64,000 nt of DNA from IMGVR_UViG_3300023049_000005:1-64000; one strand, 5' to 3'; counted from the stretch's first letter, positions 2,279 through 62,748 are shown. Translations and numbers: made by a program. The notes: generated by a model from the letters alone, not told the origin.

Positions 2279-2291
2279 ATACTATATATTA

Positions 2292-2558
2292 TTACTTACT
2301 AATCATTTTTACTTCAATAGTAGAATCGTTATCCCATTCATAAGTATGATCATCAAAGGATATCATTTCTATATGAATATACTTAGTATTACTATCAGAT
2401 TCCAAACAAAAAGAACCATTGAAATCAGTATAAGTTGTGTCTATATTATTATAGACCTTAGCTCCAACGATATCATAGTTATTTTTATCGTGAACATTAC
2501 CCGTTATTATGACGGGGGTTAAAAATTGAATTATTACATTAAGGTATATTAAAATCAT
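2292..2558 (-). CDS. small CarboxypepD_reg-like domain protein
   Basis: ITGNVHD..IVGAKV..TYTDFNGSFCL pattern after a hydrophobic N-terminus. Confidence 0.55.
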   Translation of the reverse strand: MILIYLNVIIQFLTPVIITGNVHDKNNYDIVGAKVYNNIDTTYTDFNGSFCLESDSNTKYIHIEMISFDDHTYEWDNDSTIEVKMISK

Positions 2559-2589
2559 GTCTTATATATTATTTATGAAGTATATATAT

Positions 2590-2598
2590 TAATATATA
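2590..2598 (+). promoter_or_regulatory. putative late promoter box TAATATATA (representative of at least 18 copies)
   Basis: WATATATA exactly 4 nt upstream of 16 start codons in the window. Confidence 0.7.
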
Positions 2599-2602
2599 CT
2601 TC

Positions 2603-3943
2603 ATGAGATACTTAAAAAATTTAGAACTTTTCTTAGAGTCAACTAAGAGTAATACAAACCTGATTACTGATATATGTATTGCTATGTTATTGATCAACCC
2701 TGACTTCCTTAATAGTATATTAGACAAGGGAATGCATACAAGATATAAGTATAATAACTTAGTGTTTATCAATGATCTGAAACAACTTTTAATGAAGGAA
2801 AATAGATTAATTTTAGGTAAAAAGAACGAAGAAACAGGTAGATATGAAGAAGAAGATAATATCGGTAAGATTAATTCTTATTTCAATGATCACTCTAAGG
2901 AGTTCAATATCGAAAAAGATTTCAAAAAGTTAGAGAAAGCAAGAAATATCGCAAGAAACATACAAGATAAATTATTAGTAGAAGATAAACTAAGAGCAGA
3001 AATGGTTCAGAAAGTTTATTGGATCAGTCCTAATAAAGAAAGAGGAATAAAAGAAGATATCGTTATAGAACTAGTGGGCAGTAAACAATATCCTATCGTA
3101 GTTAATAGTAATATAAATAGTTCTAAAACTAAGAGCTTTAATACATTATTAGACGTAATGTTAGATAGTGATGCTGATATACTATTCTCTGATAAGTACA
3201 TCGATCTTTGGGATAAACTTACAGTGAATTGGTTCAATGCAGTTTATAAAAACGCTAAAACAGATTATAAGATAATGATCGATCAATTCATAGATGCTTC
3301 TAGGGCAGATAGTTTAACTTTTTTCGATTACCAAAACATCGAAATATTAGACGAAAAATATAAGATATTGGGTCAATTCTTTGCGCCTTTAAATAAGAAT
3401 TATAAAGAACTACCTAAATTAATGAATGATATTTGGAAAGATAGAAAGAAAAGTATCAACAATTATCAAGAAGTAGAAAAAGAATGGGATGAAACTAAGA
3501 AAGTTTTATTAAATAATAGAATCATTGAAGATATTATCATCGGTAGTATAGAAGAATTAATAGAAGGTGAAATAAAAAAAGATGAAAATAAATTTATCAT
3601 TGCTAATAATAAAATAAAGTCTAGGTTATTAAGACTTATATTAGATATTATCTCTGTTGAAGATATCGATGTATATTATGCAGGTTCTTCAAGTTTTTAT
3701 CACTTACCATCTAAGAAATGGTTCAGGGATAACTATAATAGACTTACAGTGAAGTATGATTATCATCAAGAATTGAGTGATGATAATGATTCTCAATTTG
3801 ATATTAGAATCGAATTAGACGAGAAACCATTAATGGATCTTGAAATAAGAACAGGATTTACTAGTAATGAAATGGGGAACAAACTTAGTAGTAAAATTAA
3901 GATCAACTACACTTCTAATTTCAATCAGAAAGTTAAACAATAA
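2603..3943 (+). CDS. hypothetical protein, probable internal virion protein
   Basis: 446 aa, starts MRYLKNLELFLES; late box upstream. Confidence 0.8.
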   Translation: MRYLKNLELFLESTKSNTNLITDICIAMLLINPDFLNSILDKGMHTRYKYNNLVFINDLKQLLMKENRLILGKKNEETGRYEEEDNIGKINSYFNDHSKEFNIEKDFKKLEKARNIARNIQDKLLVEDKLRAEMVQKVYWISPNKERGIKEDIVIELVGSKQYPIVVNSNINSSKTKSFNTLLDVMLDSDADILFSDKYIDLWDKLTVNWFNAVYKNAKTDYKIMIDQFIDASRADSLTFFDYQNIEILDEKYKILGQFFAPLNKNYKELPKLMNDIWKDRKKSINNYQEVEKEWDETKKVLLNNRIIEDIIIGSIEELIEGEIKKDENKFIIANNKIKSRLLRLILDIISVEDIDVYYAGSSSFYHLPSKKWFRDNYNRLTVKYDYHQELSDDNDSQFDIRIELDEKPLMDLEIRTGFTSNEMGNKLSSKIKINYTSNFNQKVKQ

Positions 3944-3945
3944 AA

Positions 3946-4794: not shown

Positions 4795-4853
4795 AAAATT
4801 AATGTACTTCTTTTGGTCATTATATCAAAATACGACCATTAGTTTACTAAATA

Positions 4854-7437: not shown

Positions 7438-8166
7438 TTAACCAAATTTAAGTTCATTCATTCGATCTACACACATAGAAGTATAAATTTTATAATCCAT
7501 TCCATATGATCCAATAGCCCACATATCATTAACTTCTATTAACATAGTCTCACCTTTATCATTAACACCTACATCTAATGTATATGCGATTGGAGAACTA
7601 TCATAATCTCTAATCATCTTTTCAACAAGAGAAGCATCAATATACTTTCTGAAATCACCCGCATAATATTGGATTCCTTTAAGTTCCTTTTTATGAACAA
7701 AACACCTATATTCTGAAACTATATTAATAGGATCACTGATATAAAGTTCCATATCATTTGTAAGATCACAGTAATCTCTCATAAACTTCAATGATTCTTC
7801 TTTCTCGATTAATTCACCCGTAAAAAGTTTAACATCATCAGCAGGTTTTATAAAAAATGGATAATCTTTAGTGTTATTATTTAGATTACTTTTTGTAATA
7901 TCTCTCTTTAAATACTTTTTTAGTGTATCAGGATATCCTAAGTACTTAGGTACTTCTATATCTATCTTATTGAAGAAATCGGTTGTAGCCTGTACAGAAG
8001 CTATAATAATATCTGATTCTTTATATACAGGAACAGAAATCATATCCGTAAACGGAACTACTTTAAACCCCCTGTTATATAGCTCGTTATGGCATATATA
8101 CACGAAATCATCAAACCATTCGTCGTTGACAGGATCTTTCTCTAAAAAGGCTCTTTTTTCTTTCAT
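7438..8166 (-). CDS. ATP-grasp domain protein (DUF4343/R2K-like)
   Basis: FIKP..KLFTG, EYRCFV, AYTLDVG, LIEVND..AIGSYG. Confidence 0.8.
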   Translation of the reverse strand: MKEKRAFLEKDPVNDEWFDDFVYICHNELYNRGFKVVPFTDMISVPVYKESDIIIASVQATTDFFNKIDIEVPKYLGYPDTLKKYLKRDITKSNLNNNTKDYPFFIKPADDVKLFTGELIEKEESLKFMRDYCDLTNDMELYISDPINIVSEYRCFVHKKELKGIQYYAGDFRKYIDASLVEKMIRDYDSSPIAYTLDVGVNDKGETMLIEVNDMWAIGSYGMDYKIYTSMCVDRMNELKFG

Positions 8167-8194
8167 TCTACAAATATAATAAAATATATAGTAT

Positions 8195-8884
8195 ATGAAC
8201 TATTTAAAACTATTTGAAAATTGGTATGATAATAGAACAATTAAAGGGAGGAAAGATTATTCTCAAATAAATTTAGATTGGTCTAAGTTCCTAAAAGATG
8301 TTGATTACACATTCGATATTATTAAACAAGTCAATCCTAGATTGGAAACTCAATGGATAGAGCCTTTTGGTAATTACCTGACATTAATAGAAGGCGGTGA
8401 ATTAGATGATTATCATGAGATAGAAACCATCGAAGAATACGAAAACAGTTATATAAAACAACCTATTAAAGATTATATAAAGTTATTTAAGAAAACCAAG
8501 GATCGAGGATATTTGGAGGTAACTAGGATATTGACTGTTGATGATTTAAGTGAAATTGATTTTAGTAAAATAGGTAAGTATTGGTCATTCTGCGATAACC
8601 CAAGTCAAAAATTTGATAATATCTACAAAAAACAATATATCAAATTAATAGCTAAAGCTAGATTAGATAGTATAGATTGGTTAAATAGTTTAGACAATTA
8701 TGTATATTATGGGGATGATGAATGTGAGATAACACTAAGAGAAGGCGCATCTATTTTCATTGAAAAGATGATAAACGATAAAAGAACTCCTAGTGATTAT
8801 AAGACTAAGAAGGATAATAAAACTTTTTATAATTTTACAGGAAATAAGGAAACTATCGATTTAAATAAGAAGGCTAAAATTTAA
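8195..8884 (+). CDS. hypothetical protein with capsid-targeting-like motif
   Basis: Starts MNYLKLFENW; AAATATATA 4 nt before ATG. Confidence 0.75.
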   Translation: MNYLKLFENWYDNRTIKGRKDYSQINLDWSKFLKDVDYTFDIIKQVNPRLETQWIEPFGNYLTLIEGGELDDYHEIETIEEYENSYIKQPIKDYIKLFKKTKDRGYLEVTRILTVDDLSEIDFSKIGKYWSFCDNPSQKFDNIYKKQYIKLIAKARLDSIDWLNSLDNYVYYGDDECEITLREGASIFIEKMINDKRTPSDYKTKKDNKTFYNFTGNKETIDLNKKAKI

Positions 8885-20200: not shown

Positions 20201-20445
20201 ATCATTTTAACCTTACCTGTGCGAATAGCGTGATCCGATGCGTTGGTTAATATTTCATCATATAACTTAATAAAGGCAGGGTTATGATTAACCTTCTTCT
20301 TTTCTATTACTATATTATTTAGATCATTATCTTTAATAACGAACATCTCTTGTTCTTCTGTTACCTTAGATCCAACATAGGTTTCTGATCTTTTTAGGAT
20401 GTGTTCTCTTTGACTTAACTTTACATACTTATTCTCTTTAGCCAT
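17209..20445 (-). CDS. single-polypeptide type IIA DNA topoisomerase (ATPase, TOPRIM and breakage-reunion domains fused)
   Basis: DEILTNASDH, GGRNGLGAK, TEGDSA, PLKGKILN, DSDLDG, YYKGLGTS, DGLKP, YHHGE, catalytic SRY. Confidence 0.96.
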   Translation of the reverse strand: MAKENKYVKLSQREHILKRSETYVGSKVTEEQEMFVIKDNDLNNIVIEKKKVNHNPAFIKLYDEILTNASDHAIRTGKVKMIKVIIDDKKIVIENDGPTIPIEKHSKEKVYNPELIFSHLLTGENYDDTEKRLTGGRNGLGAKLCNVFSKKFKVECCDGKKMYRQWSKNNMKDIEEPEITNVKDTKSFTRITYYPDYSQFDFDSLTEDLKSIMYKRCLDVAAYIPDVRISLDGKTLPIKRLSDYMKLHLEEGQDFFYEQMDNGWEIGIAKSNEHGFVFNSICNGITTHRGGTHINHVSLNLAKQIAGKIKKKVSWQDVKNKLHIFLVCKIPNPTFDTQTKENLTNKMTVDIHQNVEVKDNTIRKVMKSDIYQAIIEEMEMREKLQLKKMGGGKKSNVNMPKLVDANKAGTRESDKCSLLLTEGDSALGFAVAGMSIVGRDYYGAFPLKGKILNTRDTSAQKIKRNKEIQSLLDIVGLQFGKKYEDTSDLRYGKIIILTDSDLDGIHIKGLLINFFEDNWPELLKLDILYEFITPILKVRKAKQVKSFYTIKEYQKWLATDVKGWSVKYYKGLGTSTAKEAKEYFSDLNNHLLPFNWDTDKNHDYIDLVFNKSRSDERKDWMIKNNVKDVVKYKTPTPISSFINNEMIGFSLEDNIRSIPDLYDGLKPSHRKIMNTVIKRNIIKDTPVSSLGGSVKETQKYHHGEQSLEMGIVNLAQDFVGSNNIPLLVPNGNFGTRLQGGKDAASSRYINTFLSDATKTIFDKRDEDILEYLQEDGVVIEPKHFKPIIPMVLVNGAEGIGTGWSTYIPKYNPNDLIRVIENKMSGKKSHRIHPHYNGFKGSIEETDNGYITYGNVDIVNTTTVRITELPIGYWTHNFTEHLHKLIEAKFIKEFLDNSTEQEVDITITISRENMMKVSKKEKLIDKFKLSSRLYTSNMHLFVDGNIRKFDQVEEIIDVFYDKRLDDYTKRKKSLLDVLNVEKTKLDNQVRFIKMVIKDELKVNNRKKDIIIKDLKKNKFDLYNDSYDYLLGMPIYSLTKEKVDELSEKLKNKKAEYNALKKKSPKDLWSDDLKDLKSFL

Positions 20446-20546
20446 CTTATAACTTTTAATTTTTAGACTTATATATAGAATAAAATTTATTTCCCTATAT
20501 ATAGTCAGTTATATGATTTATTAAAAAGTTTATAAAAAGTTTATTT

Positions 20547-21275: not shown

Positions 21276-21339
21276 AATATTATAATATTTATTTACACTA
21301 TATATTATTTATTCTATATCCAATTTTAATATATAAGAT

Positions 21340-21636
21340 ATGATTACTAGTTTTAAAGTGTTTGAAGGATTAAATATTCAACCATTAGTTGATAAAGTTG
21401 TAAAATATGGTAATATGGAAGCATTTCAATATTTAAAAAATATGAAATTTGATCTGAGTGTTAATAATAATATAATCATTGAAGTGGCTTCATCAAATAT
21501 ATATAATGAAATAGTTAAGGATATATATCATGCCATAGAAGAAGCCGCTAAATTTGGATTAGATATAGATCCGATAGATGATAATATTATATTCGATGAA
21601 AAGGAAAATAGATATAAAATAATAGATTACCTTTAA
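21340..21636 (+). CDS. small protein with capsid-targeting-like motif and a degenerate ankyrin-like repeat
   Basis: MITSFKVFEG; KYGNMEAFQYL..DLSVNNNIIIEVAS. Confidence 0.55.
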   Translation: MITSFKVFEGLNIQPLVDKVVKYGNMEAFQYLKNMKFDLSVNNNIIIEVASSNIYNEIVKDIYHAIEEAAKFGLDIDPIDDNIIFDEKENRYKIIDYL

Positions 21637-31470: not shown

Positions 31471-31485
31471 ATCTTATATATTAAA

Positions 31486-32022: not shown

Positions 32023-32337
32023 TTAGATAATAATTAAAGAGTCGATGAACTCATCTCTTTTCTGAGCTAAGAGATTTTGACGCATTTTATCATCAAATTT
32101 ATAATAATGAATAGAGTCGATATTATTAACCACATAGAAAAAAATATTAACTCTATCATATTTAGTCTTGAATAATTCATCCCCTATTTTTATGAGATAT
32201 TTATTGAGATGAATGATAATGCCATCGTGATCGAATACAGTTATATTAGATAAACGAATATATGTAGGTGTTATATCTACAGATGAATCATTTTTATGTT
32301 CATCAATATAATCGTATATCCGTTCTTCAATAGTCAT
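32023..32337 (-). CDS. hypothetical protein with C-terminal RDxxID tag
   Basis: Ends RDEFIDSLIII; TACCTTTG 5 nt before ATG. Confidence 0.7.
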   Translation of the reverse strand: MTIEERIYDYIDEHKNDSSVDITPTYIRLSNITVFDHDGIIIHLNKYLIKIGDELFKTKYDRVNIFFYVVNNIDSIHYYKFDDKMRQNLLAQKRDEFIDSLIII

Positions 32338-32416
32338 AGATACAAAGGTAATGAATTATAACTGAAACACCCATAATTAATTATATTTTATTATTATATT
32401 ATAATGTTGCACCTTT

Positions 32417-34873: not shown

Positions 34874-34888
34874 ATCTTATATATTAAA

Positions 34889-36320: not shown

Positions 36321-36366
36321 ATCATATATATTATATTGAAGAAATGCTTTGCTTAATATATACTAA

Positions 36367-36585
36367 GTGAATGATAAAGATAGGATAATATATGATCTAC
36401 TATTTAGTGAAAAAACTGAGTTCAGTTTTGAAATATCATCTCTTTTTGAGTTCATAGAAGATTACAGAGATGTGATCGAAAGTATAGTAAAGAGTGCTAA
36501 TAAAGGTAGAGTTAGTATAGTGAAAGATATTATTGAAGTAAAAGGCGATGATATTTTTTGGAATATAAAAATAAAAAGAAAGTAA
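36367..36585 (+). CDS. hypothetical protein (late)
   Basis: TAATATATA-N4-GTG; precedes the giant gene. Confidence 0.7.
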   Translation: MNDKDRIIYDLLFSEKTEFSFEISSLFEFIEDYRDVIESIVKSANKGRVSIVKDIIEVKGDDIFWNIKIKRK

Positions 36586-42500: not shown

Positions 42501-44653
42501 TAAATTATGATCCTGAAAATAGAACAGTTATAAATGATATAAGAGCAGGTGATATAGAATGTTTAGATAATTGTTATTTAACAACATTAAGAATACCTGA
42601 TCATGGATTACAAATCGGTGATGAATTTACAGTTAAGATAGAAGATGATATTTTTGAATTAGTTAATTTATATGAATCTGATTTTGCTTTCGCAACACAA
42701 AGTGGTTGGGTACAAAATGTGAATGGCGTAGAAACTGCTATCCCATTACTTAATGGACAGATAGATGACTATTCTGTAGTAAATAGTGTTGATAGTATCT
42801 ATTATGATCAACCAATTGGTGTTACTGTTGGAAGAACATATAGAATAAGTTTTGATTACAGTATGTTCGCATTTGGTGGCGGCACACCTAGTTTAGATGT
42901 AGCTTTCGGGGCAACACCTTCTCCTACATTTAATACAGTAATTAATGAATTAAGTGTAGCGAATAATCAAAGAGTAGAAACTAATTTTATTGCAACTACT
43001 TCTAGTATATACGTAGGATTCAATACAGAAAATCCTCAAATATTGACACTTCGTAATATAACAGTAGATGATATAACAAATAGGAGTAAGTATTATGATG
43101 GTAGACAAATAGCCTTTGATGTATTAAATGAAGATGTGATTGTAATTGATACAGATTATATTGGTGATGTAGTAGAAACATCAGCTACTTATACTGCGAT
43201 AAACCCCTGTGGTAAAAAAGTAATTAGAGAAAGAATAACTTCTCTTGTTGGTACAATAAGCGTATCAGAGTTCGATCCTTATTTGAATTATGAGCCAATA
43301 GATCTATATGATTTAGGTAATGATAATAAGATTAAGTACCCTACGGAGATAAACGATATTAATTGGAATATTAATGATGAAGTAGTTAATATAACAGGAA
43401 TTGATAATAACCCATATAGGTTTAGGTTAATTGATAATTTAACTTTTGATGAAATATTAGATAAATATCCTTGGTTATTAGAAGCTGAAATAAGAAATGC
43501 TGTTATTGGTAAAGATCAGAACGGATTAGTATGGTACAAAGGTACATGGGATTGTGGAAGATGGTTAGGTGGTACTTGGTATTCAGGTACATGGAAAACA
43601 GGAGTATGGTATAACGGTACTTGGTTTAATAGTAGAGTAACAACAGATAATAATAGTGCTACTATCGATGTGATAGATGCTTTCGGTGATTATAGTGTAT
43701 GGAAAGGTGGAACATGGTTCAACGGTACTAAGAAAGGTGGTCGTTGGGAATCAGGTGATTGGTTTGATGGTACTTGGGAAAAAGGCGATTGGTTAGGTGG
43801 CACTTGGAGAGGTGGTACATGGATAGACGGTAATTTCAAAAGAGGTAATTGGTTTGATGGTACATGGACAAAGGGTACATTCAATTCTGATTTTGGATTG
43901 AGTAGATGGTTTGATGGTAATTGGCTAAGAGGTGATTTTGAAAACGGTATATGGTTCAAAGGAAGATTCGAAAGTATCGGAGCGCAATCTACATTTGGTA
44001 ACAGAGCTACATTATCTAGAAAAGCTATTTGGGAAAATGGTTTTATGGTAGCAGGAACAGTTAATAGTGGAGATAATAGTAGACATGATCTTACGGTTTG
44101 GAAAACAGGTAGAGCTAATTTCCTATTATGGAATGGTGGTACAATGTTCCAAAACAATATAAACAATTGTGTATGGCAAGACGGTGTTGTTAAAGACATT
44201 GATATATTAGCTTTCTATGGGGATAATACAGGTGATTACTATTTTATAGTAGACGGAGAATATCGTTTCGAAGATGGTAATAACTTTTGGGTAATCAATA
44301 ATGACACATATAATCCTATATATGGCGCAGATACTACACCGAATAGATATACAGTTGATTTAGATTATCTAAGTTTAGATAACGGAAGGTTGACTAAGGT
44401 ATATGTTTCTAATCTACCTAGTGCTTTACTTGCTGTGATAAATAATAACGGAAGTTACGTAGAAGGGTTTTCTGATAATAATAATCCTGTTGATACAGAA
44501 GTAGATGGTACAATATTAACTAAATTAGTATCTGAGTTCTCTAAGACGAGTTGGTTTAATGGTAGAATCGAGAACTGTATATTTGATGATAGATTTATCA
44601 GAAGTGTGTATTGGGAAAACGGTTACTTCAAATCAGGTGATTTTGGATTTTAA
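36587..44653 (+). CDS. giant (2688 aa) virion structural/adhesion protein
   Basis: Tail-fibre-type VDLATT..IDG..RILVKD..ENGVY motif, propeller-like VGNNG repeats, LamG-like KWY..F.GTIDNVRLW, C-terminal GxW pentapeptide repeats. Confidence 0.75.
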   Translation: MWDYSSIEDNFKKRTGKLDKKTFNFLRQEIDSVRFYSKCLDGSSYVYSDDLNNIYDLQFRDYNTYKISSEYSTYYNGGDADGIAIDRQGNSDLGFYNRYKNDYGYTVKNLFSPKRLFNYTNYYNVDLATTQPIDFDLVDDKLTIDGEIVIIGQRILVKDNISTVTLDSSIDAETFLNTDVTVVQTIGGQITYQYSNNENGVYRYDGLQLIRENDLDTVDNVRNYSVYVKLGSSNITKSFHLNRLTNGAFPLITNNENISFTEKNDYVIRNSVDYRNVLDNNFATSLAQLETVFSFRGNTYDIPNRNITVGDFGLILNYQNNYMNIVKNRFKEDLKDIIELNNKYLIVGNNGTLLSMDKVYFDLSIIEIDSIEDLLSIDIRNGKGIIVGSNGSILTSINNNNWNELDNPIENNINAVQYFNLAKANYIGNNGVFGEVNVSGDQFKITEKELTIRPNLFDERIIRDDLHNINNVEIENQFFKYTGADWVDIPKDINSSFSFDFSFKPTDLEANDTQVLFSITPTPSATQSAVNIKGFKVFIEKENNDYRLRLSITDPNGNEVKLDGDISLSNDKWYKVFITRFKNEYEFFVNNRLGAETALGFDSNFDNFNDTIRLGAELTYDFNNSQYLTASYNNFIGTIDNVRLWDKRLDNQEVFSYGNYYSDDLPNLVTWYKFKVTKNASGDKIILTNDVVDNRSLSLPSNSNITFYNANTSATAMLEIELFKGTSIIGDNIIVFDLEDQSNYSDITTNTQFYITFDNESPKNLRYYSTDGYYYGVSDQRSFRIDSFKLDFNLLNYINDIEVELEPISNKGYDNLSINFNLQELLLIGSVENNEIDKIDLNNVCVIQPVDRLEGCTISSTVSIIDTTNSIDIENDYKDNVTDEVNVCSINYIKALGFPSSTQSVCTFYVPNGDGQPFDLYQEVYLVGEVEDQLNGYFEVSFNGVDFEEIRGNGEFIVPLGVGADSSLTFRTRLAEGADGNKVKGLIKNLKVYDNCVRDLFPEQYTGNAVEVKKLYFSQFDKTTEVDKITASNYLYSYIDLKSLQINNIEEINLATYQSEGFPVRLFESQVVNNALVNCQNTGLCSRSTFLTNNTIDRIQYGLGLSLSLTGDDYVYNNTSYNLLEPLTLTNVQLFGIDDHEVGGLNSPYHIGFDISKNFYFEVDSVIITEEDLLNSDITNGAYITQSVEMSATSSLGSGLAADVFNQIVFTGSLATYSVLTDVTLNENSKYLLELEIDGDLDFTFGTNSYSVTGSNTFVSQIVEVNQDSDFIVMKANSNTTITNLVVSDRVPTKSFIKWDTETCDLTYKLSGVSVEEGFIQSDGERFLPQCVLQQDCDITVESIVNTQYWEDYDPKLLFLNYDVANKLYFFDLETGEYQLPQNAQLFDVRELTIESLSGEKSWLDYVRDTTKEFLYAAVKSTGNTVPWSNSFILCGNITSYTLTLNTNTTNDLSEINGVASGLLPNYATGSTISIGVPPVSKDVYLYKNAMVIKIPTTFDIEIGDVIKFTNSLIDINLITIDLLDDGGNTYAYFKTGFDDYLISRLVSWTKTTTITNLNRFKDIDELLLNFNLHPISIGYTLSEINGGVELSPKYNYQTAYYNLQCNISVRNNDLIVTDTQMRYRDKVTLFDYSPNYSILSYLTKDSRFDASFKLRSLPEYNFPNNNSGVLYTLSTGEISFNSSLKAEWESIPIYTFIDLVYDTASIRSVLIMSKNYDEVTERYIIKTYDYYDDVIQQSDLTGANFNLRVRNTLGEISEDLKKLDNIQRVESDEYDITNLNATIFSSYKNLKSDLNFKPYTDSYAKAFLSQKEIKEYLSGIVYTDFNNNLAMNIINLTKDDYFPITGISKYYIDCEDCVHDNFISFDGFNQFSYFGAATSSTNRVPFETYGFNNQIQVFGATGATFVDIPLNYATQSGTSSRMIEFDIQELENATIELRKGGTSLTTISRVPNEITKVQFISDDTSDLLFRINYDPENRTVINDIRAGDIECLDNCYLTTLRIPDHGLQIGDEFTVKIEDDIFELVNLYESDFAFATQSGWVQNVNGVETAIPLLNGQIDDYSVVNSVDSIYYDQPIGVTVGRTYRISFDYSMFAFGGGTPSLDVAFGATPSPTFNTVINELSVANNQRVETNFIATTSSIYVGFNTENPQILTLRNITVDDITNRSKYYDGRQIAFDVLNEDVIVIDTDYIGDVVETSATYTAINPCGKKVIRERITSLVGTISVSEFDPYLNYEPIDLYDLGNDNKIKYPTEINDINWNINDEVVNITGIDNNPYRFRLIDNLTFDEILDKYPWLLEAEIRNAVIGKDQNGLVWYKGTWDCGRWLGGTWYSGTWKTGVWYNGTWFNSRVTTDNNSATIDVIDAFGDYSVWKGGTWFNGTKKGGRWESGDWFDGTWEKGDWLGGTWRGGTWIDGNFKRGNWFDGTWTKGTFNSDFGLSRWFDGNWLRGDFENGIWFKGRFESIGAQSTFGNRATLSRKAIWENGFMVAGTVNSGDNSRHDLTVWKTGRANFLLWNGGTMFQNNINNCVWQDGVVKDIDILAFYGDNTGDYYFIVDGEYRFEDGNNFWVINNDTYNPIYGADTTPNRYTVDLDYLSLDNGRLTKVYVSNLPSALLAVINNNGSYVEGFSDNNNPVDTEVDGTILTKLVSEFSKTSWFNGRIENCIFDDRFIRSVYWENGYFKSGDFGF
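43532..44180 (+). repeat. GxWxx pentapeptide repeat coding region (probable beta-helix)
   Basis: KGTWDCGRWLGGTWYSGTWKTGVWYNGTW and following repeats. Confidence 0.85.
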
Positions 44654-44663
44654 TATATATACT

Positions 44664-45044
44664 GTGATCAAAAGTTATAAAATATTCGAATCAGATAATA
44701 AGGAACGAAGACTTAATCAAGCTGCTATAAAAGGAGATTTAAAAGAAGTAAAGAAATTACTTAACGACTCTGATGTAGATATAGAGCATTATGATAATTC
44801 CGCACTTTGGTATGCAGTAGCATATAATCGTTTAGATGTAATAAAAGAATTATTAAAAGACCCTAGAATTGATCCTACTTATGATAAGAACCGTGCTATT
44901 AAATTAGCATCATCAAATGGTGATGATGAGATAGTATTATTGTTGTTACATGACAAAAGAGTACAAAAAAGTCTATCTAAAAAAAAATTAGCAGAGTTTG
45001 GTAAACTACTTACTGCTGATTTGATAGTAAATCTAAATAAGTAA
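44664..45044 (+). CDS. ankyrin repeat protein with capsid-targeting-like motif
   Basis: TAATATATA-N4-GTG; MIKSYKIFESDNK; LLKDPRIDPT; paralog of the 31486 gene. Confidence 0.8.
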   Translation: MIKSYKIFESDNKERRLNQAAIKGDLKEVKKLLNDSDVDIEHYDNSALWYAVAYNRLDVIKELLKDPRIDPTYDKNRAIKLASSNGDDEIVLLLLHDKRVQKSLSKKKLAEFGKLLTADLIVNLNK

Positions 45045-45060
45045 TTTAATATATAATATA

Positions 45061-45624
45061 ATGGATAAGTTTAGTAAATTAAAGAAGAAGAAAAAGAAAA
45101 AGGGTGATAAACTTTTATATGAAGGAGATTACCTGAAGGTTTATAAAAGAGATGATTGGGCATATATCAAAGAACCTGATAATGCTTGTGTAGTTCCTAT
45201 TTTATTAGATAGTGATGAATTCTTAGTAAGGATGGAAGTAATACCAAGTTTCCAATCGAGAGATGATCAAGATTATCACTTAACATGTATTAGCGGAACA
45301 ATCGAAGATGAAGAATCTCCTAAGATGTGTTTAGTTAGAGAACTAGAAGAAGAAGCGGGTATCCGTTTAAAAGATAATGTTAATATCGAATTCTTTGATG
45401 TTTTATATAAATCTAAAAGTCAGAGTTCTCAATTCCATTTATGTATATTACCATTATTATCTTATCAATTTGATGAAGTAGTAGCTAAAGGAGATGGATC
45501 TAATATAGAGAAGATGTCTAAAACAGTAGCAGTTTCTTATGATAATATAGATAGACTATTCCCATCTGATATAGTAACCTCATTACTTTTAGAGAAGGTT
45601 AAAGAACATTTTAAGAAGAAATAA
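45061..45624 (+). CDS. Nudix hydrolase (ADP-ribose pyrophosphatase-like)
   Basis: Nudix box GTIEDEESPKMCLVRELEEEAG. Confidence 0.85.
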   Translation: MDKFSKLKKKKKKKGDKLLYEGDYLKVYKRDDWAYIKEPDNACVVPILLDSDEFLVRMEVIPSFQSRDDQDYHLTCISGTIEDEESPKMCLVRELEEEAGIRLKDNVNIEFFDVLYKSKSQSSQFHLCILPLLSYQFDEVVAKGDGSNIEKMSKTVAVSYDNIDRLFPSDIVTSLLLEKVKEHFKKK

Positions 45625-46674: not shown

Positions 46675-47021
46675 TTTTCTATTTCAAATGGGAGGTTAGT
46701 TTTATCGAAAGTAACAGGTTTACTTAACATAAAGTTAGCTTCCCATAATTCACTTAAGCCTAATGTTTTCTTTTCTATTTTCTTCTCGTTTTGAGAAGTA
46801 ACTAAAGGTCTGATTGCAGTAACTACGTAATTACCATTAGTCGTTTCTTTATCGAAGTATAATTTTAAGACATCCCCTTTCTTAATATCAACATCTATTT
46901 CAATATCAGATCCTGCGAAAATATCTAATTTATAATTCTCTGTGAATTTAACTATCTCATATTTTCTAAACACAGTAGTATTAGATTCTAAGAATAATTT
47001 ATAATTTTTAATGTTCTTCAT
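46665..47021 (-). CDS. hypothetical protein with capsid-targeting-like motif
   Basis: Starts MKNIKNYKLFLES; TTATATATA-N4-ATG. Confidence 0.75.
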   Translation of the reverse strand: MKNIKNYKLFLESNTTVFRKYEIVKFTENYKLDIFAGSDIEIDVDIKKGDVLKLYFDKETTNGNYVVTAIRPLVTSQNEKKIEKKTLGLSELWEANFMLSKPVTFDKTNLPFEIENYL

Positions 47022-47095
47022 ATCCTATATATAAAAAAAAAGAATAGTATATTTGTATCTATGGGATATGATTATCACAAAGAAAATATTAGCAG

Positions 47096-50281: not shown

Positions 50282-50845
50282 TTATTTTACATTTCTATAT
50301 GTTAAAAGATAAAAATCTTTTCTTGGTATAATACACTTATTAAACCTTTCTTTAACCCTTCTATTTATCTTTCTTTCCCATTTGCTAGATCCTTCTGATA
50401 TCAACAATAAACTTCTTGGTTCTACTAGAAAGTCTAATATCAGATCATCATTTTTCTTAAGGTTATAAACGAAAGAAGATCCTAATACAATTATTATAAC
50501 ATTGTCTTGGAAGACATCACCTTCCTTCATGTAATTATGACCGTCTTCTTTTCTGAAATGTTGTATAACTAATTGGTCATAATTCAGACCCATTGGTTTT
50601 AGTAAATTAAGATAATCAGGAAGTGGCTCTTTTTCTTTATTATGATGTTTCCTATTAAATTTATAATCTAATCCGAAAAACTTAGTTGGTCTACCATTCG
50701 ATAAGTTATAATCTAACTTTTGAAGAAAACTGAACAATTCATCGTGTTTTTCTTTTGTTAAGAAATTTGGATGATATTGTAGACCGTCTATTTTATCCAC
50801 GATCTTTTTAGTTAATTCCGAGTTTTTTCTATAAGCAACTTCCAT
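50282..50845 (-). CDS. AlkB-like 2OG-Fe(II) oxygenase-fold protein lacking metal ligands
   Basis: GLQYHPNFLT, DQLVIQHF, VLGS, EPRSLLLIS, LTYR; HxD..H absent. Confidence 0.65.
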   Translation of the reverse strand: MEVAYRKNSELTKKIVDKIDGLQYHPNFLTKEKHDELFSFLQKLDYNLSNGRPTKFFGLDYKFNRKHHNKEKEPLPDYLNLLKPMGLNYDQLVIQHFRKEDGHNYMKEGDVFQDNVIIIVLGSSFVYNLKKNDDLILDFLVEPRSLLLISEGSSKWERKINRRVKERFNKCIIPRKDFYLLTYRNVK

Positions 50846-50865
50846 AACCTATATATTAATGTAGG

Positions 50866-52047: not shown

Positions 52048-53012
52048 TTATTTAATTTGTAAAGTATCTAAATTTTTATTGAATAGTGTCTTATATATGT
52101 TATTGACTGAGAATTCAGGTCTGTTTTGTGTACCAAATAATGATCTCGGTGAAAAAACAACCTCGATTTTATCATTACCTACTTCTTTGATATCATGTAT
52201 AGTTATCCGATATCCCGCAATACTATTTGATGAGGTAAAAGTTAATGATCCTGTCCCACCAAAATCAAATTCAAAGTACACTAAGTCATATGTATTAACA
52301 AATGACTTATTATATGTACTAAATAATGCTTTTAATTTTTCTGTTTCATAATCAAATATGAAATTTTCTATATTACCTTCTACATAAGAATCGAAAAATT
52401 CCACGTCATACGTATCAGTAGATAAATCATATTTAGATATACGCAATTCACTTGTGGTTGTTACACCTGCTTGCCCCCTTTGGTAATATATCTTACTATT
52501 ATTTCTATCATAGTAGATAGGCGTAACGGATCTTAAATCATTGGATACGTCCAATGAATCACCCGAAGTCCTAGAATATGTTCCAATAATATTTATTGTA
52601 CTATTGGTCAAATCGTTTTGGTCAAATCGTTTTGGTCGATTTGCCACTCTGTCCACTTAGCTCTATATCCATTAGTGGATGTAGCACCACCGACTATTTC
52701 ATCATCTGCTGTCATGGGAAATATAAAATTACCCGTATCATAATCATATAAAACAAAATTTTGTCTATATAATTGACCATAAGAAGCACCATATGTATCA
52801 TTAGGTGTCCAAGATTCTTCGCTACTTAAATCGAAATTTAAATTGTACCTAGACACAGAAACAGTGCCTGTAGTCTGACCATTGACCCCATGTTCAAATC
52901 TATATACCCATCCCCTTATTTCGTCTGTTATAATCAACCCGTCTGTGTCTATATACCCATTAGTTGATAGGTCAAAATCTTCTACTATTCCCAATTCTAT
53001 ATTACTAGTCAT
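52048..53012 (-). pseudogene. late gene (about 316 aa if intact) split by a 14-bp tandem duplication
   Basis: ORFs 52608..53012 and 52048..52656 fuse in frame (QIDQNDLTNSTINII) when one TTGGTCAAATCGTT copy is removed. Confidence 0.75.
52604..52637. repeat. 14-bp tandem duplication TTGGTCAAATCGTT x2 plus TTGGTC
   Basis: Directly visible. Confidence 0.95.
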
Positions 53013-53047
53013 ACGATTATATATTAAATATAATTAAGACGCTAATT

Positions 53048-56814: not shown

Positions 56815-56815
56815 A

Positions 56816-57734: not shown

Positions 57735-57766
57735 AATACAAATGTACAAAATTTAATATATACAGT

Positions 57767-58144
57767 ATGGCAAATTTTGATTTTACTGACCTTTATATTA
57801 AATATCCTAGCCATCCGAACTACGACTCAACGAAAGTAGATGAAGATGATATAGTTAGAGTTATATTACAAAAGTATGAAATGATACTTTTTACAAACAA
57901 GGGGGAAGTATTAGGTGATCCTAACTTCGGTGCTGATATAAACAGACTTCTTTTTCAGACTAAAGTATCTAGTAGATATGTAGAAAGAATAATAAGAGAA
58001 CAGATAGCTAATTATATACCTGAACTAAACGGAATCGGATATGATTTAAATATTACTTTTCAACAAAATCCTAATAATTATTCTGATGTTATGTTAATAG
58101 ATTTTAAAGTAAGGGGTCAGGAAGTCAATGCATTTTTTGCCTAA
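57767..58144 (+). CDS. baseplate wedge protein, T4 gp25-like
   Basis: ILFTNKGEVLGDPNFG..LLF; late box upstream. Confidence 0.75.
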   Translation: MANFDFTDLYIKYPSHPNYDSTKVDEDDIVRVILQKYEMILFTNKGEVLGDPNFGADINRLLFQTKVSSRYVERIIREQIANYIPELNGIGYDLNITFQQNPNNYSDVMLIDFKVRGQEVNAFFA

Positions 58145-59199: not shown

Positions 59200-59214
59200 A
59201 ACTTTTATTGAATT

Positions 59215-59246: not shown

Positions 59247-59272
59247 ATATAATATATTTAGAATTTGTTTAA

Positions 59273-59815: not shown

Positions 59816-59876
59816 AATATTGTAATATTTTTCTATTATTATATATTAACTATAAAAACTAGTTTTTTCTCTTTTT

Positions 59877-60518: not shown

Positions 60519-60916
60519 TTCCCCATTCTTTTTTGTGTATCTTTAATAAGATCATATGAATCATCCATTATAGTAGGGTTCTTCTTAAACTCTTCTAATT
60601 CGTTCTCAGCTTTTATTCTATCTCTCTTATTAGTTTCGAGTCTATTTTGTAACGCTTTATTTTTCTTATCTAAATTGGATATCGCTTCATTTAGCTCGTT
60701 TTCTCTTTCGATCCAATACTTCGCCCTCTTATCAAATATTGATAAACTATCTACTAATTGATCTATTTCGTTCTGTATCATTTCTTTTTCTTTAACTAAT
60801 ACAGCGTTTTCTTGTTTCAGTTCTTGATTAGGATCGGGATCTTTATCAAATATGATAAAGTATGCCAATGCAGCACCAAGTATTATTATAATTATCTGAT
60901 TTAAATTTAATTTCAT
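60515..60916 (-). CDS. N-terminal TM plus coiled-coil protein (i-spanin-like architecture)
   Basis: IIIIILGAALAYFIIF then coiled coil; late box upstream. Confidence 0.6.
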   Translation of the reverse strand: MKLNLNQIIIIILGAALAYFIIFDKDPDPNQELKQENAVLVKEKEMIQNEIDQLVDSLSIFDKRAKYWIERENELNEAISNLDKKNKALQNRLETNKRDRIKAENELEEFKKNPTIMDDSYDLIKDTQKRMGK

Positions 60917-60960
60917 GACTTATATATAAACTTTTTCGTTTCTAATACTATTATATTAAT

Positions 60961-61356
60961 ATGAAAGATAAAGTTTATTGTACCACAAGAGAACAAAAAA
61001 ATAGACAAATAATGGAAAACTCATTAAATGCCAAATATTTAAATATCATTAAGAAGTGTAGGTTTGTACCTAAGCCCGATGAGTGGTTTGTAGAAGGTGA
61101 GACATGTAACTTTATTGGTGTACCCTTCGGTAATTATGAAAAAGAATATAAATTCCACGACAAAGCAGGATATTTTGAAGGTTTGACCAATGAGACATTC
61201 ACAGGATATACAGGCGACTTATCAAGAATGGATGGAGAAACTTGTGTTTTTGAAGAATTTTATATCTACGATGAATATGATAATGAAATATCAGAACTAA
61301 CTTTAGAAGAATATATTGTATTACTTAGGGATCAGATAATTGATTACTTAGTCTGA
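60961..61356 (+). CDS. hypothetical protein with C-terminal RDxxID tag
   Basis: Ends RDQIIDYLV. Confidence 0.7.
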   Translation: MKDKVYCTTREQKNRQIMENSLNAKYLNIIKKCRFVPKPDEWFVEGETCNFIGVPFGNYEKEYKFHDKAGYFEGLTNETFTGYTGDLSRMDGETCVFEEFYIYDEYDNEISELTLEEYIVLLRDQIIDYLV

Positions 61357-62042
61357 GCTTGTTTTAATTGGTTAATCCATTTACTTTTCTTGGGTCTACC
61401 AAAGATCTGACGATCTCCGTAAGCAGGATAATAGGTTTGTACTTCGAAATCGAAACTCATTTTAACTAAGTCTTCTTCACCCATAGAGAAATCTCTTATA
61501 ATTTCAATATTATTTTCCTCAGGGAATGTAGCTACTGCATCAATATACATAAAATTATATTCAAAGAACATATGATCATAAAACATTAATGCGTTCATAA
61601 TAGACTCAGATGCTTTAAACGTATCCAATTCACTTCCTAATAAAAGAGTCCCACTAAACTTCGCAGATATAGGCATTGCTCTAACTTTAGTTAATACTTT
61701 TCTAATTTCTTCTGAATCTTCAATCACTTGTTGTAACCATATATTAGGGTTAGCGAACTCTGACCCTTTGATGTTCCAACTATCTAATGTGATATGCATT
61801 CTTGGTATTACATCAGTGTTCATATCTAATTTTCTAGCATCCCCTAATATATCATCTGAGAAACTATCTAATAAATAATCATCGTTTTTACCACTTAATG
61901 AATAGTAAACGGGGATATCAACTTGTACTTCCCCATCTGAGAAGTTATTGACCCATCCTATTCTTTCTTCCATCATTGCTAATGTGCATATAGTGAGATC
62001 CCTAAAGAAAACATCATCATAATTAAATTTCTTTCCTATCAT
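61344..62042 (-). CDS. tail sheath stabilizer/terminator, T4 gp15-like
   Basis: IPVYY, IPRM, ..F.FEVQTYYP pattern; late box upstream. Confidence 0.6.
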   Translation of the reverse strand: MIGKKFNYDDVFFRDLTICTLAMMEERIGWVNNFSDGEVQVDIPVYYSLSGKNDDYLLDSFSDDILGDARKLDMNTDVIPRMHITLDSWNIKGSEFANPNIWLQQVIEDSEEIRKVLTKVRAMPISAKFSGTLLLGSELDTFKASESIMNALMFYDHMFFEYNFMYIDAVATFPEENNIEIIRDFSMGEEDLVKMSFDFEVQTYYPAYGDRQIFGRPKKSKWINQLKQAQTK

Positions 62043-62122
62043 GTACTATATATAATTTTTTTGATCTTATCTAAACAATATTAGATCTCTTTAATATATA
62101 TTGTTAAAACCTTTATAAACAA

Positions 62123-62590
62123 TTGGAAAGAAAATGGGATAATATAGAATATGTTTTTCTTAAAAAGAAAAAAGCTAATGGTTTTCCTAATGGTCGAGAG
62201 ATCGGGGAAAAGCTAAAGGTTCTTGGTGTGTCCTATAGTAAGAACTATACATGTTTAATAATTAAAGGCAATAAAAATAATAACGATAGTTTCAAAATTC
62301 ATGAATCTTATGTAGATAATATAGCTGAGAAAAGAAATGATACTATTGTTTCCATCTTAACAGAAGGTCTAATATATTATTCTGATCATAAAAGACATCT
62401 AATTTGTTATCCGTATAGTATAGAGAATCTACATCTAATGGCAGAAGATTTACAGATAAACAATTGTTGGTTTCACAAAGATCATTATGATATACCCAAA
62501 AGAAGGATATCAGAGATAGCAAAAAAGACGGTGAATATTAGTAGTAAAGATATCGTAAGAATAATAAATGGAGAAAAATTATTTGTTTGA
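62123..62590 (+). CDS. two-domain protein with C-terminal DUF4031-like domain
   Basis: HL....IENLHLMA..L.I..CWFH.DHYDIP; RNDTIVSIL at the domain junction. Confidence 0.55.
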   Translation: MERKWDNIEYVFLKKKKANGFPNGREIGEKLKVLGVSYSKNYTCLIIKGNKNNNDSFKIHESYVDNIAEKRNDTIVSILTEGLIYYSDHKRHLICYPYSIENLHLMAEDLQINNCWFHKDHYDIPKRRISEIAKKTVNISSKDIVRIINGEKLFV

Positions 62591-62731
62591 TTTCTTGATA
62601 AGATCAATGAGTGAATAAACACAATCCCCCTCATATCTTTTCTTGTCCATCCTAGATATAGCCACGGCTATTTTATCTTCATAATATACATCAAAGACTT
62701 CGCCTTCTACATTTATTCTAATATTTCCCAT
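62579..62731 (-). CDS. 50-aa microprotein (not in ORF track)
   Basis: MGNIRINVEGEVFDVYYEDKIAVAISRMDKKRYEGDCVYSLIDLIKKSNK; TAATATATA-N4-ATG. Confidence 0.55.
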   Translation of the reverse strand: MGNIRINVEGEVFDVYYEDKIAVAISRMDKKRYEGDCVYSLIDLIKKSNK

Positions 62732-62748
62732 GGTCTATATATTACAGA

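What the first reader, a model, noticed from the sequence alone, without database searches (positions are those of the whole stretch)
2279..62744. Late promoter box fixed 4 nt before start codons implies leaderless late mRNAs
Seen: WATATATA followed by exactly 4 nt and then ATG/GTG at starts 2278, 2558, 2603, 8195, 21340, 31470, 34873, 36320, 36367, 44664, 47021, 50845, 57767, 60916, 62042 and 62731, with a 5-nt spacer at 45061 and 53012. These include the gp25- and gp15-like genes. Established: T4 late promoters are a -10-only TATAAATA box read by gp55, with +1 a few nt downstream. Inference: +1 falls on or beside the start codon, so late translation would be largely leaderless. The palindrome TAATATATATTA (63201-63212) could drive both clpS and the GNAT gene.
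Basis: partly seen in the sequence, partly recalled or inferred. Interest (0 to 1): 0.6.

Follow-up and report, generated by a model that had tools for sequence, protein, structure and literature searches.

The report
Promoter boxes abutting start codons: leaderless phage genes
A 271-kb T4-like jumbo phage of a Bacteroidota-type host places a fixed promoter box exactly four bases before the ATG of about a fifth of its genes, so these genes are most likely transcribed as leaderless mRNAs that begin with the start codon, although no RNA data exist to prove it.

Summary
WATATATA-N4-RTG occurs 17 times in the window against 1.4 expected. Across the 270,756-bp phage genome, 51 called genes start exactly 4 nt after ATATATA.

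The box (consensus tTTAATATATA) is the most enriched upstream 7-mer. It has no -35 partner. It precedes terminase, gp25-like baseplate and adaptor genes with no leader, and portal, protease, major capsid and sheath genes with 14-28 nt leaders.

The phage encodes a 122-aa gp55-like sigma whose model has its best PDB match in T4 gp55 (TM 0.75, rmsd 1.5 A).

The Bacteroidota sigma-A '-7' box TAnnTTTG, mapped by others at -12 to -5, also sits exactly 4 nt before 11 ATGs. Two unrelated promoter boxes sharing one geometry puts +1 on the A of ATG.

No gene has a Shine-Dalgarno sequence. The box genes lack the A(-3)/A(-6) translation signals of the other genes. Position -1 is a pyrimidine in 47 of 51.

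Metagenomic relatives, including published 640-735 kb huge phages, share the layout. One cultured Chryseobacterium relative does not.

'Largely leaderless' is overstated: about half of the promoters are leaderless and most genes are operon-internal. No TSS data exist. I rate this a new variant of known kinds.

The parts
2276..2290 (-). Late box AATATATA + 4 nt + ATG of gene 1685-2278 (197 aa)
2556..2570 (-). Late box + 4 nt + ATG of gene 2292-2558 (88 aa); back-to-back with the next box in a 44-nt divergent intergenic region
2591..2605 (+). Late box + 4 nt + ATG of gene 2603-3943 (446 aa)
8164..8178 (-). Host-type sigma-A '-7' box TATATTTG + 4 nt + ATG of gene 7438-8166 (ATP-grasp R2K protein)
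8183..8197 (+). Late box + 4 nt + ATG of gene 8195-8884 (229 aa)
21328..21342 (+). Late box + 4 nt + ATG of gene 21340-21636 (98 aa)
31468..31482 (-). Late box + 4 nt + ATG of gene 30727-31470 (247 aa)
32335..32350 (-). Sigma-A-type box TACCTTTG + 5 nt + ATG of gene 32023-32337
34871..34885 (-). Late box + 4 nt + ATG of gene 33665-34873 (402 aa)
36318..36332 (-). Late box + 4 nt + ATG that opens only a 42-aa ORF overlapping the 5' end of the ankyrin gene 34889-36241; doubtful gene or frameshift
36355..36369 (+). Late box + 4 nt + GTG of gene 36367-36585 (72 aa), followed by the 2688-aa gene 36587-44653
44652..44666 (+). Late box + 4 nt + GTG of a 126-aa ankyrin-like gene 44664-45044
45048..45063 (+). 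Late box + 5 nt + ATG of the Nudix hydrolase gene 45061-45624
47019..47033 (-). Late box (TATATATA) + 4 nt + ATG of gene 46665-47021
50843..50857 (-). Late box + 4 nt + ATG of gene 50282-50845
53010..53025 (-). Late box + 5 nt + ATG of gene 52608-53012
57755..57769 (+). Late box + 4 nt + ATG of the gp25-like baseplate wedge gene 57767-58144; 125-aa counterparts in relatives L017 (Pfam GPW_gp25) and L018 (same gene neighbourhood) keep box-N4-ATG with different spacer letters
60914..60928 (-). Late box (TATATATA) + 4 nt + ATG of gene 60515-60916 (weak Rz-like spanin match)
62040..62054 (-). Late box (TATATATA) + 4 nt + ATG of gene 61344-62042
62729..62743 (-). Late box + 4 nt + ATG of a 50-aa ORF 62579-62731
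63201..63212 (.). Palindrome carrying the box in both orientations; 21 nt from the ATG of the acetyltransferase gene (63231, +) and 7 nt from the ATG of the ClpS-like gene (63196, -); not the leaderless form
20445..20480 (-). Example of the leadered class: box ATATATA 24 nt upstream of the ATG of the topoisomerase II gene 17209-20445

Best explanation
The 8-mer [A/T]ATATATA, usually preceded by TTT, is the -10-like element of this phage's late promoter class. It has no -35 element. It is most likely read by the host RNA polymerase core carrying the phage's 122-aa gp55-like sigma (genome 88183-88551).

The box occupies -12 to -5, the same place as the Bacteroidota sigma-A '-7' element. When an ATG follows after exactly 4 nt, transcription therefore starts on the A of ATG. 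The mRNA then has no 5' leader and would be translated by the ribosome recognising a 5'-terminal AUG.

About half of the late-box promoters (57 of 113) and about 40% of the host-type TAnnTTTG promoters (14 of 33) are built this way. The rest give 14-28 nt A-rich leaders.

Shown: the motif, its spacing, its statistics, the gene classes, the sigma homologue, the absence of SD, and the conservation in relatives. Inferred: the transcription start point, which sigma reads the box, late timing, and leaderless translation.
For: 1. Spacing is a spike at 4 nt: 52 ORF starts, against 1 at spacer 3 and 6 at spacer 5. In 51 of 52 cases the ATG is the first start codon of the ORF. The excess over shuffles is about ten-fold.

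2. In an unbiased hexamer count ending 4 nt before all 327 gene starts, TATATA ranks first (52) and TATTTG second (7). These are the late box and the sigma-A box.

3. TAnnTTTG sits exactly 4 nt before 11 ATGs and 5 nt before 3 more. In F. psychrophilum this box lies at -12 to -5 (PMC9723704). In F. johnsoniae it lies 4-5 nt from the TSS (PMC6847099). For that class, +1 is therefore the A of ATG.

4. Position -1 is a pyrimidine in 47 of 51 cases and +1 is A in 50 of 51, the usual Y(-1)R(+1) start context.

5. The same TTT-flanked box also lies 18-32 nt upstream of about 55 other ATGs, so it is not tied to the start codon. ATATATA is the most enriched upstream 7-mer: 96 of 177 intergenic regions against 6.3 expected.

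6. There is no SD anywhere. Box genes have A at -3 in 6 of 51 and never at -6. Other genes have A at about 54% and 52% of those positions. A(-3) and A(-6) stimulate translation in Flavobacterium.

7. Box genes include terminase, gp25-like baseplate, adaptor and DNA end protector with no leader, and portal, protease, major capsid protein and sheath with a leader.

8. gp55-like sigma: phrog_234 E 9e-7. T4 gp55 (7d7c_F) is the top PDB hit by profile and by fold, with TM 0.75 and rmsd 1.5 A. The gp55 residues Y97 and T99, which contact the -12 and -8 adenines, are conserved. H95, in the -9 pocket, is F here, and -9 is the one base where TATATATA differs from TATAAATA.

9. Box genes head transcription units: 26 of 51 are divergent from their upstream neighbour, against 32 of 180 box-less genes. 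Two promoters fit in 31-51 nt between divergent ATGs. Strong terminator hairpins abut the box at genome positions 69664 and 221607.

10. Relatives whose sigma is 44-81% identical keep the layout.
Against: - No transcript 5' ends exist for this phage or its clade. All public runs holding it are DNA metagenomes.
- If the box were numbered as in T4 (-13 to -6, PMC2988020), +1 would fall on the T of ATG, so the geometry argument needs a 1-nt shorter spacing than in T4.
- The 735-kb relative uses a 5-nt spacer, so spacing is lineage-specific.
- Leaderless mRNAs are rare in the Bacteroidota studied: 3.7-5.5%.
- No gp45-type clamp was found with T4 profiles, and gp33 was not searched.
- The Y-R signal at +4/+5 is weak in the leadered class: 21 of 54.
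- 'Late' timing is inferred only from gene functions. Non-structural genes such as Nudix hydrolases also carry the box, and topoisomerase II has an ATATATA 24 nt upstream.
Confidence: 0.7

Rival explanations
1. Same promoter and the same leaderless outcome, but the box is read by another factor than the gp55-like protein. Candidates are the phage's 286-aa sigma-70-family protein (genome 68723-69583) or a modified host holoenzyme.
For: A second sigma with region 2 (47 bits) and a weak region 4 match is encoded. It lies directly upstream of a terminator followed by a box gene. No clamp or gp33 partner of a T4-type system was found.
Against: The box has no -35-like partner, which fits a region-2-only sigma. 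It is 7 of 8 identical to the T4 gp55 box when it starts with T. The gp55 residues that hold the -12 and -8 adenines are conserved in the 122-aa protein. By tblastn, homologues of the 122-aa sigma were found in the relatives that also show the layout.
Confidence: 0.17
2. The box works at the RNA level inside longer transcripts. It would be an AU-rich, unstructured translation initiation region or the binding site of a translational regulator (RegA-like), and the promoters lie elsewhere.
For: The host type lacks SD and relies on AU-rich, unstructured initiation regions (PMC6847099). 25 of the 51 box genes follow a co-directional gene and could be read from upstream transcripts.
Against: An invariant 7-8-mer is not what a low-structure region needs. 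The box genes lack the A(-3) and A(-6) that favour translation in Flavobacterium. The same box sits 18-32 nt from other ATGs. The unrelated DNA promoter element TAnnTTTG shows the same 4-nt spacing. Half of the box genes are divergent, with only 31-51 nt between ATGs. Terminators abut some boxes.
Confidence: 0.08
3. The box marks an RNA processing site. A phage or host endoribonuclease would cut long transcripts just upstream of the AUG, as MazF or RegB do at their own sites, and so create leaderless mRNAs after transcription.
For: The fixed distance to AUG and the sequence specificity would fit a nuclease site. Primer-extension ends cannot tell processing from initiation, a caution raised for T4 in PMC2988020.
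Against: This does not explain the similarity to the gp55 box, the parallel TAnnTTTG class, the divergent pairs or the terminator-box arrangement. No such nuclease was identified, but none was searched for.
Confidence: 0.04

Closest known systems
Bacteriophage T4 late promoters (TATAAATA, gp55/gp33/gp45)
   Same: An 8-bp AT-rich -10-like box without a -35 element. An A in place of the first T is a tolerated variant in both systems. Both have a small sigma with only a region-2-like domain, of the same fold. The box stands in front of head, tail and packaging genes, on both strands.
   Different: The fifth base of the box is T instead of A. The sigma is 122 aa rather than 185 aa and lacks the helix-loop-helix part. 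No gp45-type clamp was detected and gp33 was not searched. T4 late mRNAs have leaders with SD sequences, and in T4 +1 is the 6th nt after the box; here an ATG begins at the 5th nt in half of the promoters.
Leaderless transcripts of Thermus phages phiYS40 and Lalka27a
   Same: Phage promoters whose start point is the A or G of the start codon, for most or many genes, including promoters thought to need a phage-modified polymerase (bioRxiv 10.64898/2026.04.20.719267).
   Different: Thermus hosts themselves use leaderless mRNAs widely (about 39% in Deinococcus-Thermus, PMC3160421). Bacteroidota do so for only 3.7-5.5% of mRNAs. Those cases are experimentally mapped and this one is not. The promoter sequences are unrelated.
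Bacteroidota sigma-A promoters (-7 TAnnTTTG)
   Same: An 8-mer at -12 to -5 with 4-5 nt to the TSS. The phage carries such boxes in front of 33 genes, and the late box takes the same position.
   Different: In the hosts, 87% or more of leaders exceed 10 nt. In the phage, 14 of 33 such boxes abut the ATG. A -33 TTTG partner is mostly absent here.
Jumbo phages with mapped transcriptomes (phiKZ, AR9)
   Same: Large genomes with distinct promoter classes.
   Different: phiKZ showed no leaderless transcript (PMC8244752). AR9 UTRs are 26-491 nt (PMC5312081). Both use their own multisubunit RNAPs, which this phage lacks.

Membership tests
T4-type late transcription system | gp55-family sigma (region-2-only) | tested here: met
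   phrog_234 E 9.4e-7. A profile of 21 homologues has T4 gp55 (7d7c_F) as its top PDB hit, E 0.064. The AF2 model has pLDDT 82, and its Foldseek top hit is 7d7c_F with TM 0.75 and rmsd 1.5 A over 104 columns.
T4-type late transcription system | 8-bp AT-rich -10-like box resembling TATAAATA, no -35 element | tested here: met
   The box is [A/T]ATATATA, 6-7 of 8 identical to TATAAATA. There is no conservation from -30 to -17. The A-for-T first-base variant is also known in T4 (PMC2988020).
T4-type late transcription system | Box precedes late (virion and packaging) genes | tested here: met
   Terminase, baseplate, adaptor, portal, protease, major capsid protein and sheath carry it. Some non-structural genes carry it too.
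T4-type late transcription system | Sliding clamp (gp45) as activator | tested here: inconclusive
   phrog_223 and PF02916 find nothing in the genome. A gp44-like clamp loader is present at window 55179-56147. The genome record is 89% complete.
T4-type late transcription system | gp33 co-activator | not tested
   No search was made.
T4-type late transcription system | Transcription start about 6 nt after the box; dependence on replication | not testable with these tools
   No RNA runs hold this DNA.
Leaderless mRNA | Primary 5' end on the first base of the start codon | not testable with these tools
   Only DNA metagenome runs hold the sequence.
Leaderless mRNA | -10-type promoter element ending a few nt before the start codon, at fixed distance | tested here: met
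   The spike at 4 nt for two independent box types.
Leaderless mRNA | Strong preference for AUG; no upstream translation signals | tested here: met
   50 of 51 starts are ATG. There is no SD. A(-3) occurs in 6 of 51 and A(-6) in 0 of 51, against about half in other genes.
Bacteroidota sigma-A promoter | TAnnTTTG at -12 to -5 | tested here: inconclusive
   The motif lies in front of 33 genes, 14 of them at 4-5 nt from the ATG. TAnnTTTG-N4-ATG occurs 25 times against 7.2 +/- 2.8 in shuffles. The TSS itself was not measured.
Bacteroidota sigma-A promoter | -33 TTTG partner | tested here: not met
   Only 20 TTTG-N17-21-TAnnTTTG matches genome-wide, and only 4 lie within 80 nt upstream of a gene start. 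This element is also weak in F. johnsoniae.

The most novel reading that the evidence does not exclude
A whole clade of jumbo and huge Bacteroidota phages (this one and the 460-735 kb 'huge phages') has rebuilt its gene expression around leaderless mRNAs in a host phylum that hardly uses them. It would couple this to phage-encoded translation parts (a bS21 homologue and a tmRNA are present here), so that ribosomes are biased toward 5'-AUG phage messages. That would be a translational takeover mechanism.
Probability: 0.15. Interest if true: 0.8.

Novelty: new variant of a known kind. Interest (0 to 1): 0.6.

Why it matters
If the start points are confirmed, a T4-type late promoter fused to the start codon would be the main expression signal for about a fifth of the genes of a jumbo phage. 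It would also be a shared trait of the largest known phages of Bacteroidota.

It would mean that these phages rely on leaderless translation in hosts that lack Shine-Dalgarno pairing and rarely use leaderless mRNAs. That gives a concrete hypothesis for why such phages carry ribosomal protein bS21.

Practically, the box is an accurate start-codon and promoter predictor for annotating these poorly annotated genomes. It rescued the GTG start at 44664. It also offers very compact promoter-plus-start modules: two divergent genes fit within 31 nt.

Tried and rejected
- phrog_12791, a second late-sigma family: no match.
- Near-identical phage records: none.
- Relatives of the 446-aa box gene 2603-3943 in IMG/VR: none confirmed.
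- PHROG scans of the box-gene products tried: most gave no hit, so the functional class rests on a minority of them.
- Terminator hairpins directly upstream of the box: only 3 of 51 late-box genes and 1 of 11 sigma-A-box genes, against 1% at random positions. This is supportive anecdote, not a general rule.
- Y-R initiator in the leadered class: weak, 21 of 54.
- A third promoter motif for the second sigma: none was evident in a 7-mer enrichment.
- Cultured relative Chryseobacterium phage MA9V-1 (sigma 32% identical): it has no box-N4-ATG. By eye, several of its genes have a TATACATAC-like or TATACTA-like string some 15-35 nt upstream of the ATG, so it cannot serve as an experimental stand-in.
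- The literature searches found no prior description of this box or of leaderless genes in Bacteroidota phages. The library is incomplete.
Full report
**What the window is.** The window is the first 64 kb of a 270,756-bp linear IMG/VR virus record. It is 89% complete by CheckV and has 29.8% G+C. The only public runs that hold it are lake-water DNA metagenomes.

It is a T4-like jumbo phage. It has a Gp23-family major capsid protein (PF07068, 102 bits). It also has portal, prohead protease, tail sheath, large terminase, a gp25-like baseplate wedge protein, a gp44-like clamp loader, fused topoisomerase II and a B-family DNA polymerase. It has no multisubunit RNA polymerase.

Its closest relatives by DnaK, topoisomerase, capsid and sigma are the unannotated 460-735 kb 'huge phage' records LR745206 and LR756500-LR756504. 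More distant relatives are the Prevotella Lak phages, Chryseobacterium phages MA9V-1 and MA9V-2, and Tenacibaculum phages. Every named host in that list is a member of the Bacteroidota.

**The observation.** WATATATA-N4-RTG occurs 17 times in the window, against 1.39 +/- 1.16 in dinucleotide-preserving shuffles. Genome-wide, ATATATA-N4-ATG occurs 57 times against 5.9 +/- 2.4.

The distance from ATATATA to the start of an ORF of at least 50 aa is a spike. Spacer 4 has 52 cases, spacer 3 has 1 and spacer 5 has 6. In 51 of 52 cases the ATG is the first start codon of its ORF.

The aligned sites give tTT-A-ATATATA, then a spacer [not T][T/G][A][T/C], then ATG. Position -1 is a pyrimidine in 47 of 51 sites, and the start codon is ATG in 50 of 51.

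One listed site (36320, minus strand) opens only a 42-aa ORF. One (44664, GTG) heads a 126-aa ankyrin-like gene that my crude gene call had dropped.

**The box is not tied to the start codon.** With my own gene call of 327 genes, the genes fall into these classes:

| Class | Genes |
|---|---|
| Late box at 4 nt | 51 |
| Late box at 3 or 5 nt | 6 |
| Late box 10-45 nt upstream | 56 |
| TAnnTTTG at 4 nt | 11 |
| TAnnTTTG at 5 nt | 3 |
| TAnnTTTG 10-45 nt upstream | 19 |
| Neither box | 181 |

The upstream TTT is equally enriched in the 4-nt class and the leadered class, but not at boxes far from genes. If transcription starts 5 nt after the box, most leaders of the second class would be 14-28 nt, with a mode of 16-20 nt. 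That is close to the short leaders typical of Bacteroidota: a median of 24 nt in F. psychrophilum and a mode of 23 nt in B. thetaiotaomicron.

ATATATA is the most enriched 7-mer in upstream intergenic DNA. It occurs in 96 of 177 regions, against 6.3 expected. ATATTTG is the next unrelated motif.

Genes with neither box follow a co-directional gene with a median gap of 5.5 nt, so they are operon-internal. By contrast, 26 of 51 leaderless-type genes diverge from their upstream neighbour.

**The key extra finding.** No gene in this genome has a Shine-Dalgarno sequence. G is depleted and A enriched upstream of starts, which is the Bacteroidota pattern (PMC6847099).

The Bacteroidota primary-sigma '-7' element TAnnTTTG is present, mostly as TATATTTG. 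It sits exactly 4 nt before 11 ATGs and 5 nt before 3 more. One example in the window is at 8164-8178.

An unbiased count of hexamers ending 4 nt before all gene starts ranks TATATA first (52) and TATTTG second (7).

For TAnnTTTG the geometry has been measured by others. It occupies -12 to -5 in F. psychrophilum (PMC9723704). In F. johnsoniae it lies 4 or 5 nt from the TSS, with T-12, A-11, T-8, T-7, T-6 and G-5 (PMC6847099). TAnnTTTG-N4-ATG therefore places +1 on the A of ATG.

The late box takes exactly the same position. Two unrelated DNA promoter elements sharing one sharp distance to the start codon is what RNA polymerase geometry predicts. A ribosome-binding signal does not predict it.

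**Who reads the box.** A 122-aa ORF at genome 88183-88551 matches the PHROG family of T4 gp55 (E 9.4e-7). It has 43 metagenomic homologues. A profile of 21 of them has T4 gp55 (PDB 7d7c chain F) as its best PDB match.

An AlphaFold model (pLDDT 82) has 7d7c_F as its best structural match, with TM 0.75 and rmsd 1.5 A over 104 columns. Region 2 of other sigmas follows.

In the T4 open complex, gp55 flips out the adenines at -12, -9 and -8. Y97 and T99 hold -12 and -8, and N13 and H95 hold -9 (PMC7892883). In the profile alignment, Y97 and T99 correspond to the invariant Y77 and nearly invariant T79 here, while H95 corresponds to F75. The base at -9 is the one position where TATATATA differs from TATAAATA. 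This correlation is suggestive, not proof.

The protein ends in a disordered, conserved tail. This tail could be a clamp-binding motif, but no gp45-type clamp was detected.

A second sigma of 286 aa is also encoded, with region 2 at 47 bits and a weak region 4 match. It remains an alternative reader of the box.

**Is it 'late'?** Among box genes with a recognisable function, the following were identified:
- Leaderless type: large terminase (plus a separate N-terminal terminase-like piece), gp25-like baseplate, an adaptor-like protein, a DNA end protector and a tape-measure-like protein.
- Leadered type: portal, prohead protease, major capsid protein and tail sheath.

Two Nudix hydrolases also carry the box, and topoisomerase II has an ATATATA 24 nt upstream. 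'Late' is therefore an inference from function and from the T4 analogy, not a measurement.

**Arguments against an RNA-level role.**
- In F. johnsoniae, adenines at -3 and -6 stimulate translation.
- The box genes have A at -3 in only 6 of 51 cases and never at -6. The other genes have A at about half of those positions.
- Divergent pairs of leaderless-type genes leave only 31-51 nt between their ATGs.
- At genome positions 69664 and 221607, a strong terminator hairpin with a T-run is followed at once by the box and the ATG. At 115281 a weaker terminator-like hairpin precedes the box.

**Register and the T4 comparison.** In T4 the box is numbered -13 to -6, and P23 starts at the 6th nt after it. 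Copying that numbering would put +1 on the T of ATG.

I consider the A more likely for four reasons. It is the purine after a conserved pyrimidine. It lies 7 nt after the first six bases of the box, which from my own knowledge of sigma-70 promoters is the modal start position. The host's own box uses the same spacing. An ATG conserved at a fixed distance, and always the first in-frame start, has no reason to exist if it is not in the mRNA.

A start 1-2 nt upstream would still be functionally leaderless.

**Conservation.**
- Loci from three metagenomic relatives, with the gp55-like sigma 81%, 64% and 56% identical, show 4, 6 and 2 ATATATA-N4-ATG gene starts per 20 kb. The GPW_gp25 gene of L017, and a 125-aa gene in the same neighbourhood in L018, keep the arrangement with different spacer letters.
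- In a 42-kb stretch of the 642-kb huge phage LR756502, spacers of 4 and 5 nt both occur.
- In a 43-kb stretch of the 735-kb LR756501, the same AATATATA box sits 5 nt before 7 ATGs, again with a pyrimidine at -1.
- The cultured Chryseobacterium phage MA9V-1 has no such arrangement. By eye, several of its genes have a TATACATAC-like or TATACTA-like string some 15-35 nt upstream of the ATG.

The trait is therefore lineage-specific.

**Comparison with what is known.** Leaderless phage transcripts are established for lambda cI and for Thermus phages phiYS40 and Lalka27a. Thermus itself uses leaderless mRNAs widely. Bacteroidota use them for only 3.7-5.5% of mRNAs. In phiKZ none were found, and in AR9 the shortest UTR is 26 nt.

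My literature searches found no description of this box or of leaderless genes in Bacteroidota phages. The library does not hold all journals. I rate the finding as a new variant of known kinds: T4-type late promoters and leaderless mRNAs.

**Limits.**
- There is no direct evidence for any transcription start, for timing or for translation.
- The gene call is my own crude one.
- Functional labels rest on the minority of proteins that have family matches.
- Relatives were sampled as 20-43 kb stretches, not as whole genomes.
- Read laying was not used because no RNA run exists.

Noticed in passing
genome-wide; window 8164-8178 (-) and 32335-32350 (-): The Bacteroidota sigma-A box TAnnTTTG sits exactly 4 nt (11 genes) or 5 nt (3 genes) before ATG.
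   Followed up: yes
outside the window: genome 153945-154148 (+), locus L008:9945-10148: The phage encodes a ribosomal protein bS21 homologue (PF01165, 31-32 bits, above cut-off). It has a late box 20 nt upstream. It may be relevant to SD-less or leaderless translation.
   Followed up: partly
outside the window: genome 105538-105913 (-), locus L006:1538-1913: A phage-encoded tmRNA (Rfam RF00023, 59.3 bits, full length), also called by ARAGORN.
   Followed up: partly
outside the window: genome 68723-69583 (+), locus L004:4723-5583: A second phage sigma factor of 286 aa (Sigma70_r2 at 47 bits, weak r4_2). It is followed by a strong terminator hairpin that abuts a late box and the ATG at 69664.
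   Followed up: partly
outside the window: genome 73275-73762 and 157959-164004: Two tRNA clusters with 19 tRNA genes in all (Lys, Phe, Leu, Asn, Ile, Thr, Val, Met, Cys) by ARAGORN.
   Followed up: no
outside the window: genome 115281-117518, 184877-185374, 101831-103453, 121923-123647: A large terminase of 745 aa, plus a separate 165-aa ORF matching the N-terminal part of terminase families. Two homing-endonuclease genes (phrog_3339) sit directly after the capsid gene and after the sheath gene.
   Followed up: no
window 36191-36320 (-) and 34889-36241 (-): A box-N4-ATG opens a 42-aa ORF that overlaps the 5' end of the 450-aa ankyrin-repeat gene in another frame. This may be a frameshift, an assembly error or a small gene.
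   Followed up: partly
window 36587-44653 (+): A 2688-aa protein with only a Laminin_G_3 domain recognised and no PHROG match. It is preceded by a 72-aa box gene that starts with GTG.
   Followed up: no
window 48267-50156 (-), 62915-63196 (-), 26261-27319 (+): Host-like genes: DnaK (about 64% identical to that of huge phage LR756502), a ClpS-like adaptor and a tellurite-resistance-family protein (phrog_5890).
   Followed up: no
locus L023 (LR756501.1 657921-701070): In the 735-kb huge phage the same AATATATA box sits 5 nt, not 4 nt, before 7 ATGs in 43 kb. The spacer begins with G in 6 of the 7 and ends in a pyrimidine. The spacing differs between lineages.
   Followed up: partly
locus L025 (Chryseobacterium phage MA9V-1, OR050627.1 97103-137384): This cultured distant relative lacks box-N4-ATG. 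By eye, several genes have a TATACATAC-like or TATACTA-like string some 15-35 nt upstream of the ATG, possibly its own late promoter.
   Followed up: no
alignment A1, C-terminal 15 residues of the gp55-like sigma: A conserved, predicted-disordered tail (S-I-D-S-x-N-D-G-Q-G-M-H-N-I). It stands where T4 gp55 carries its sliding-clamp-binding motif. No clamp gene was identified.
   Followed up: no
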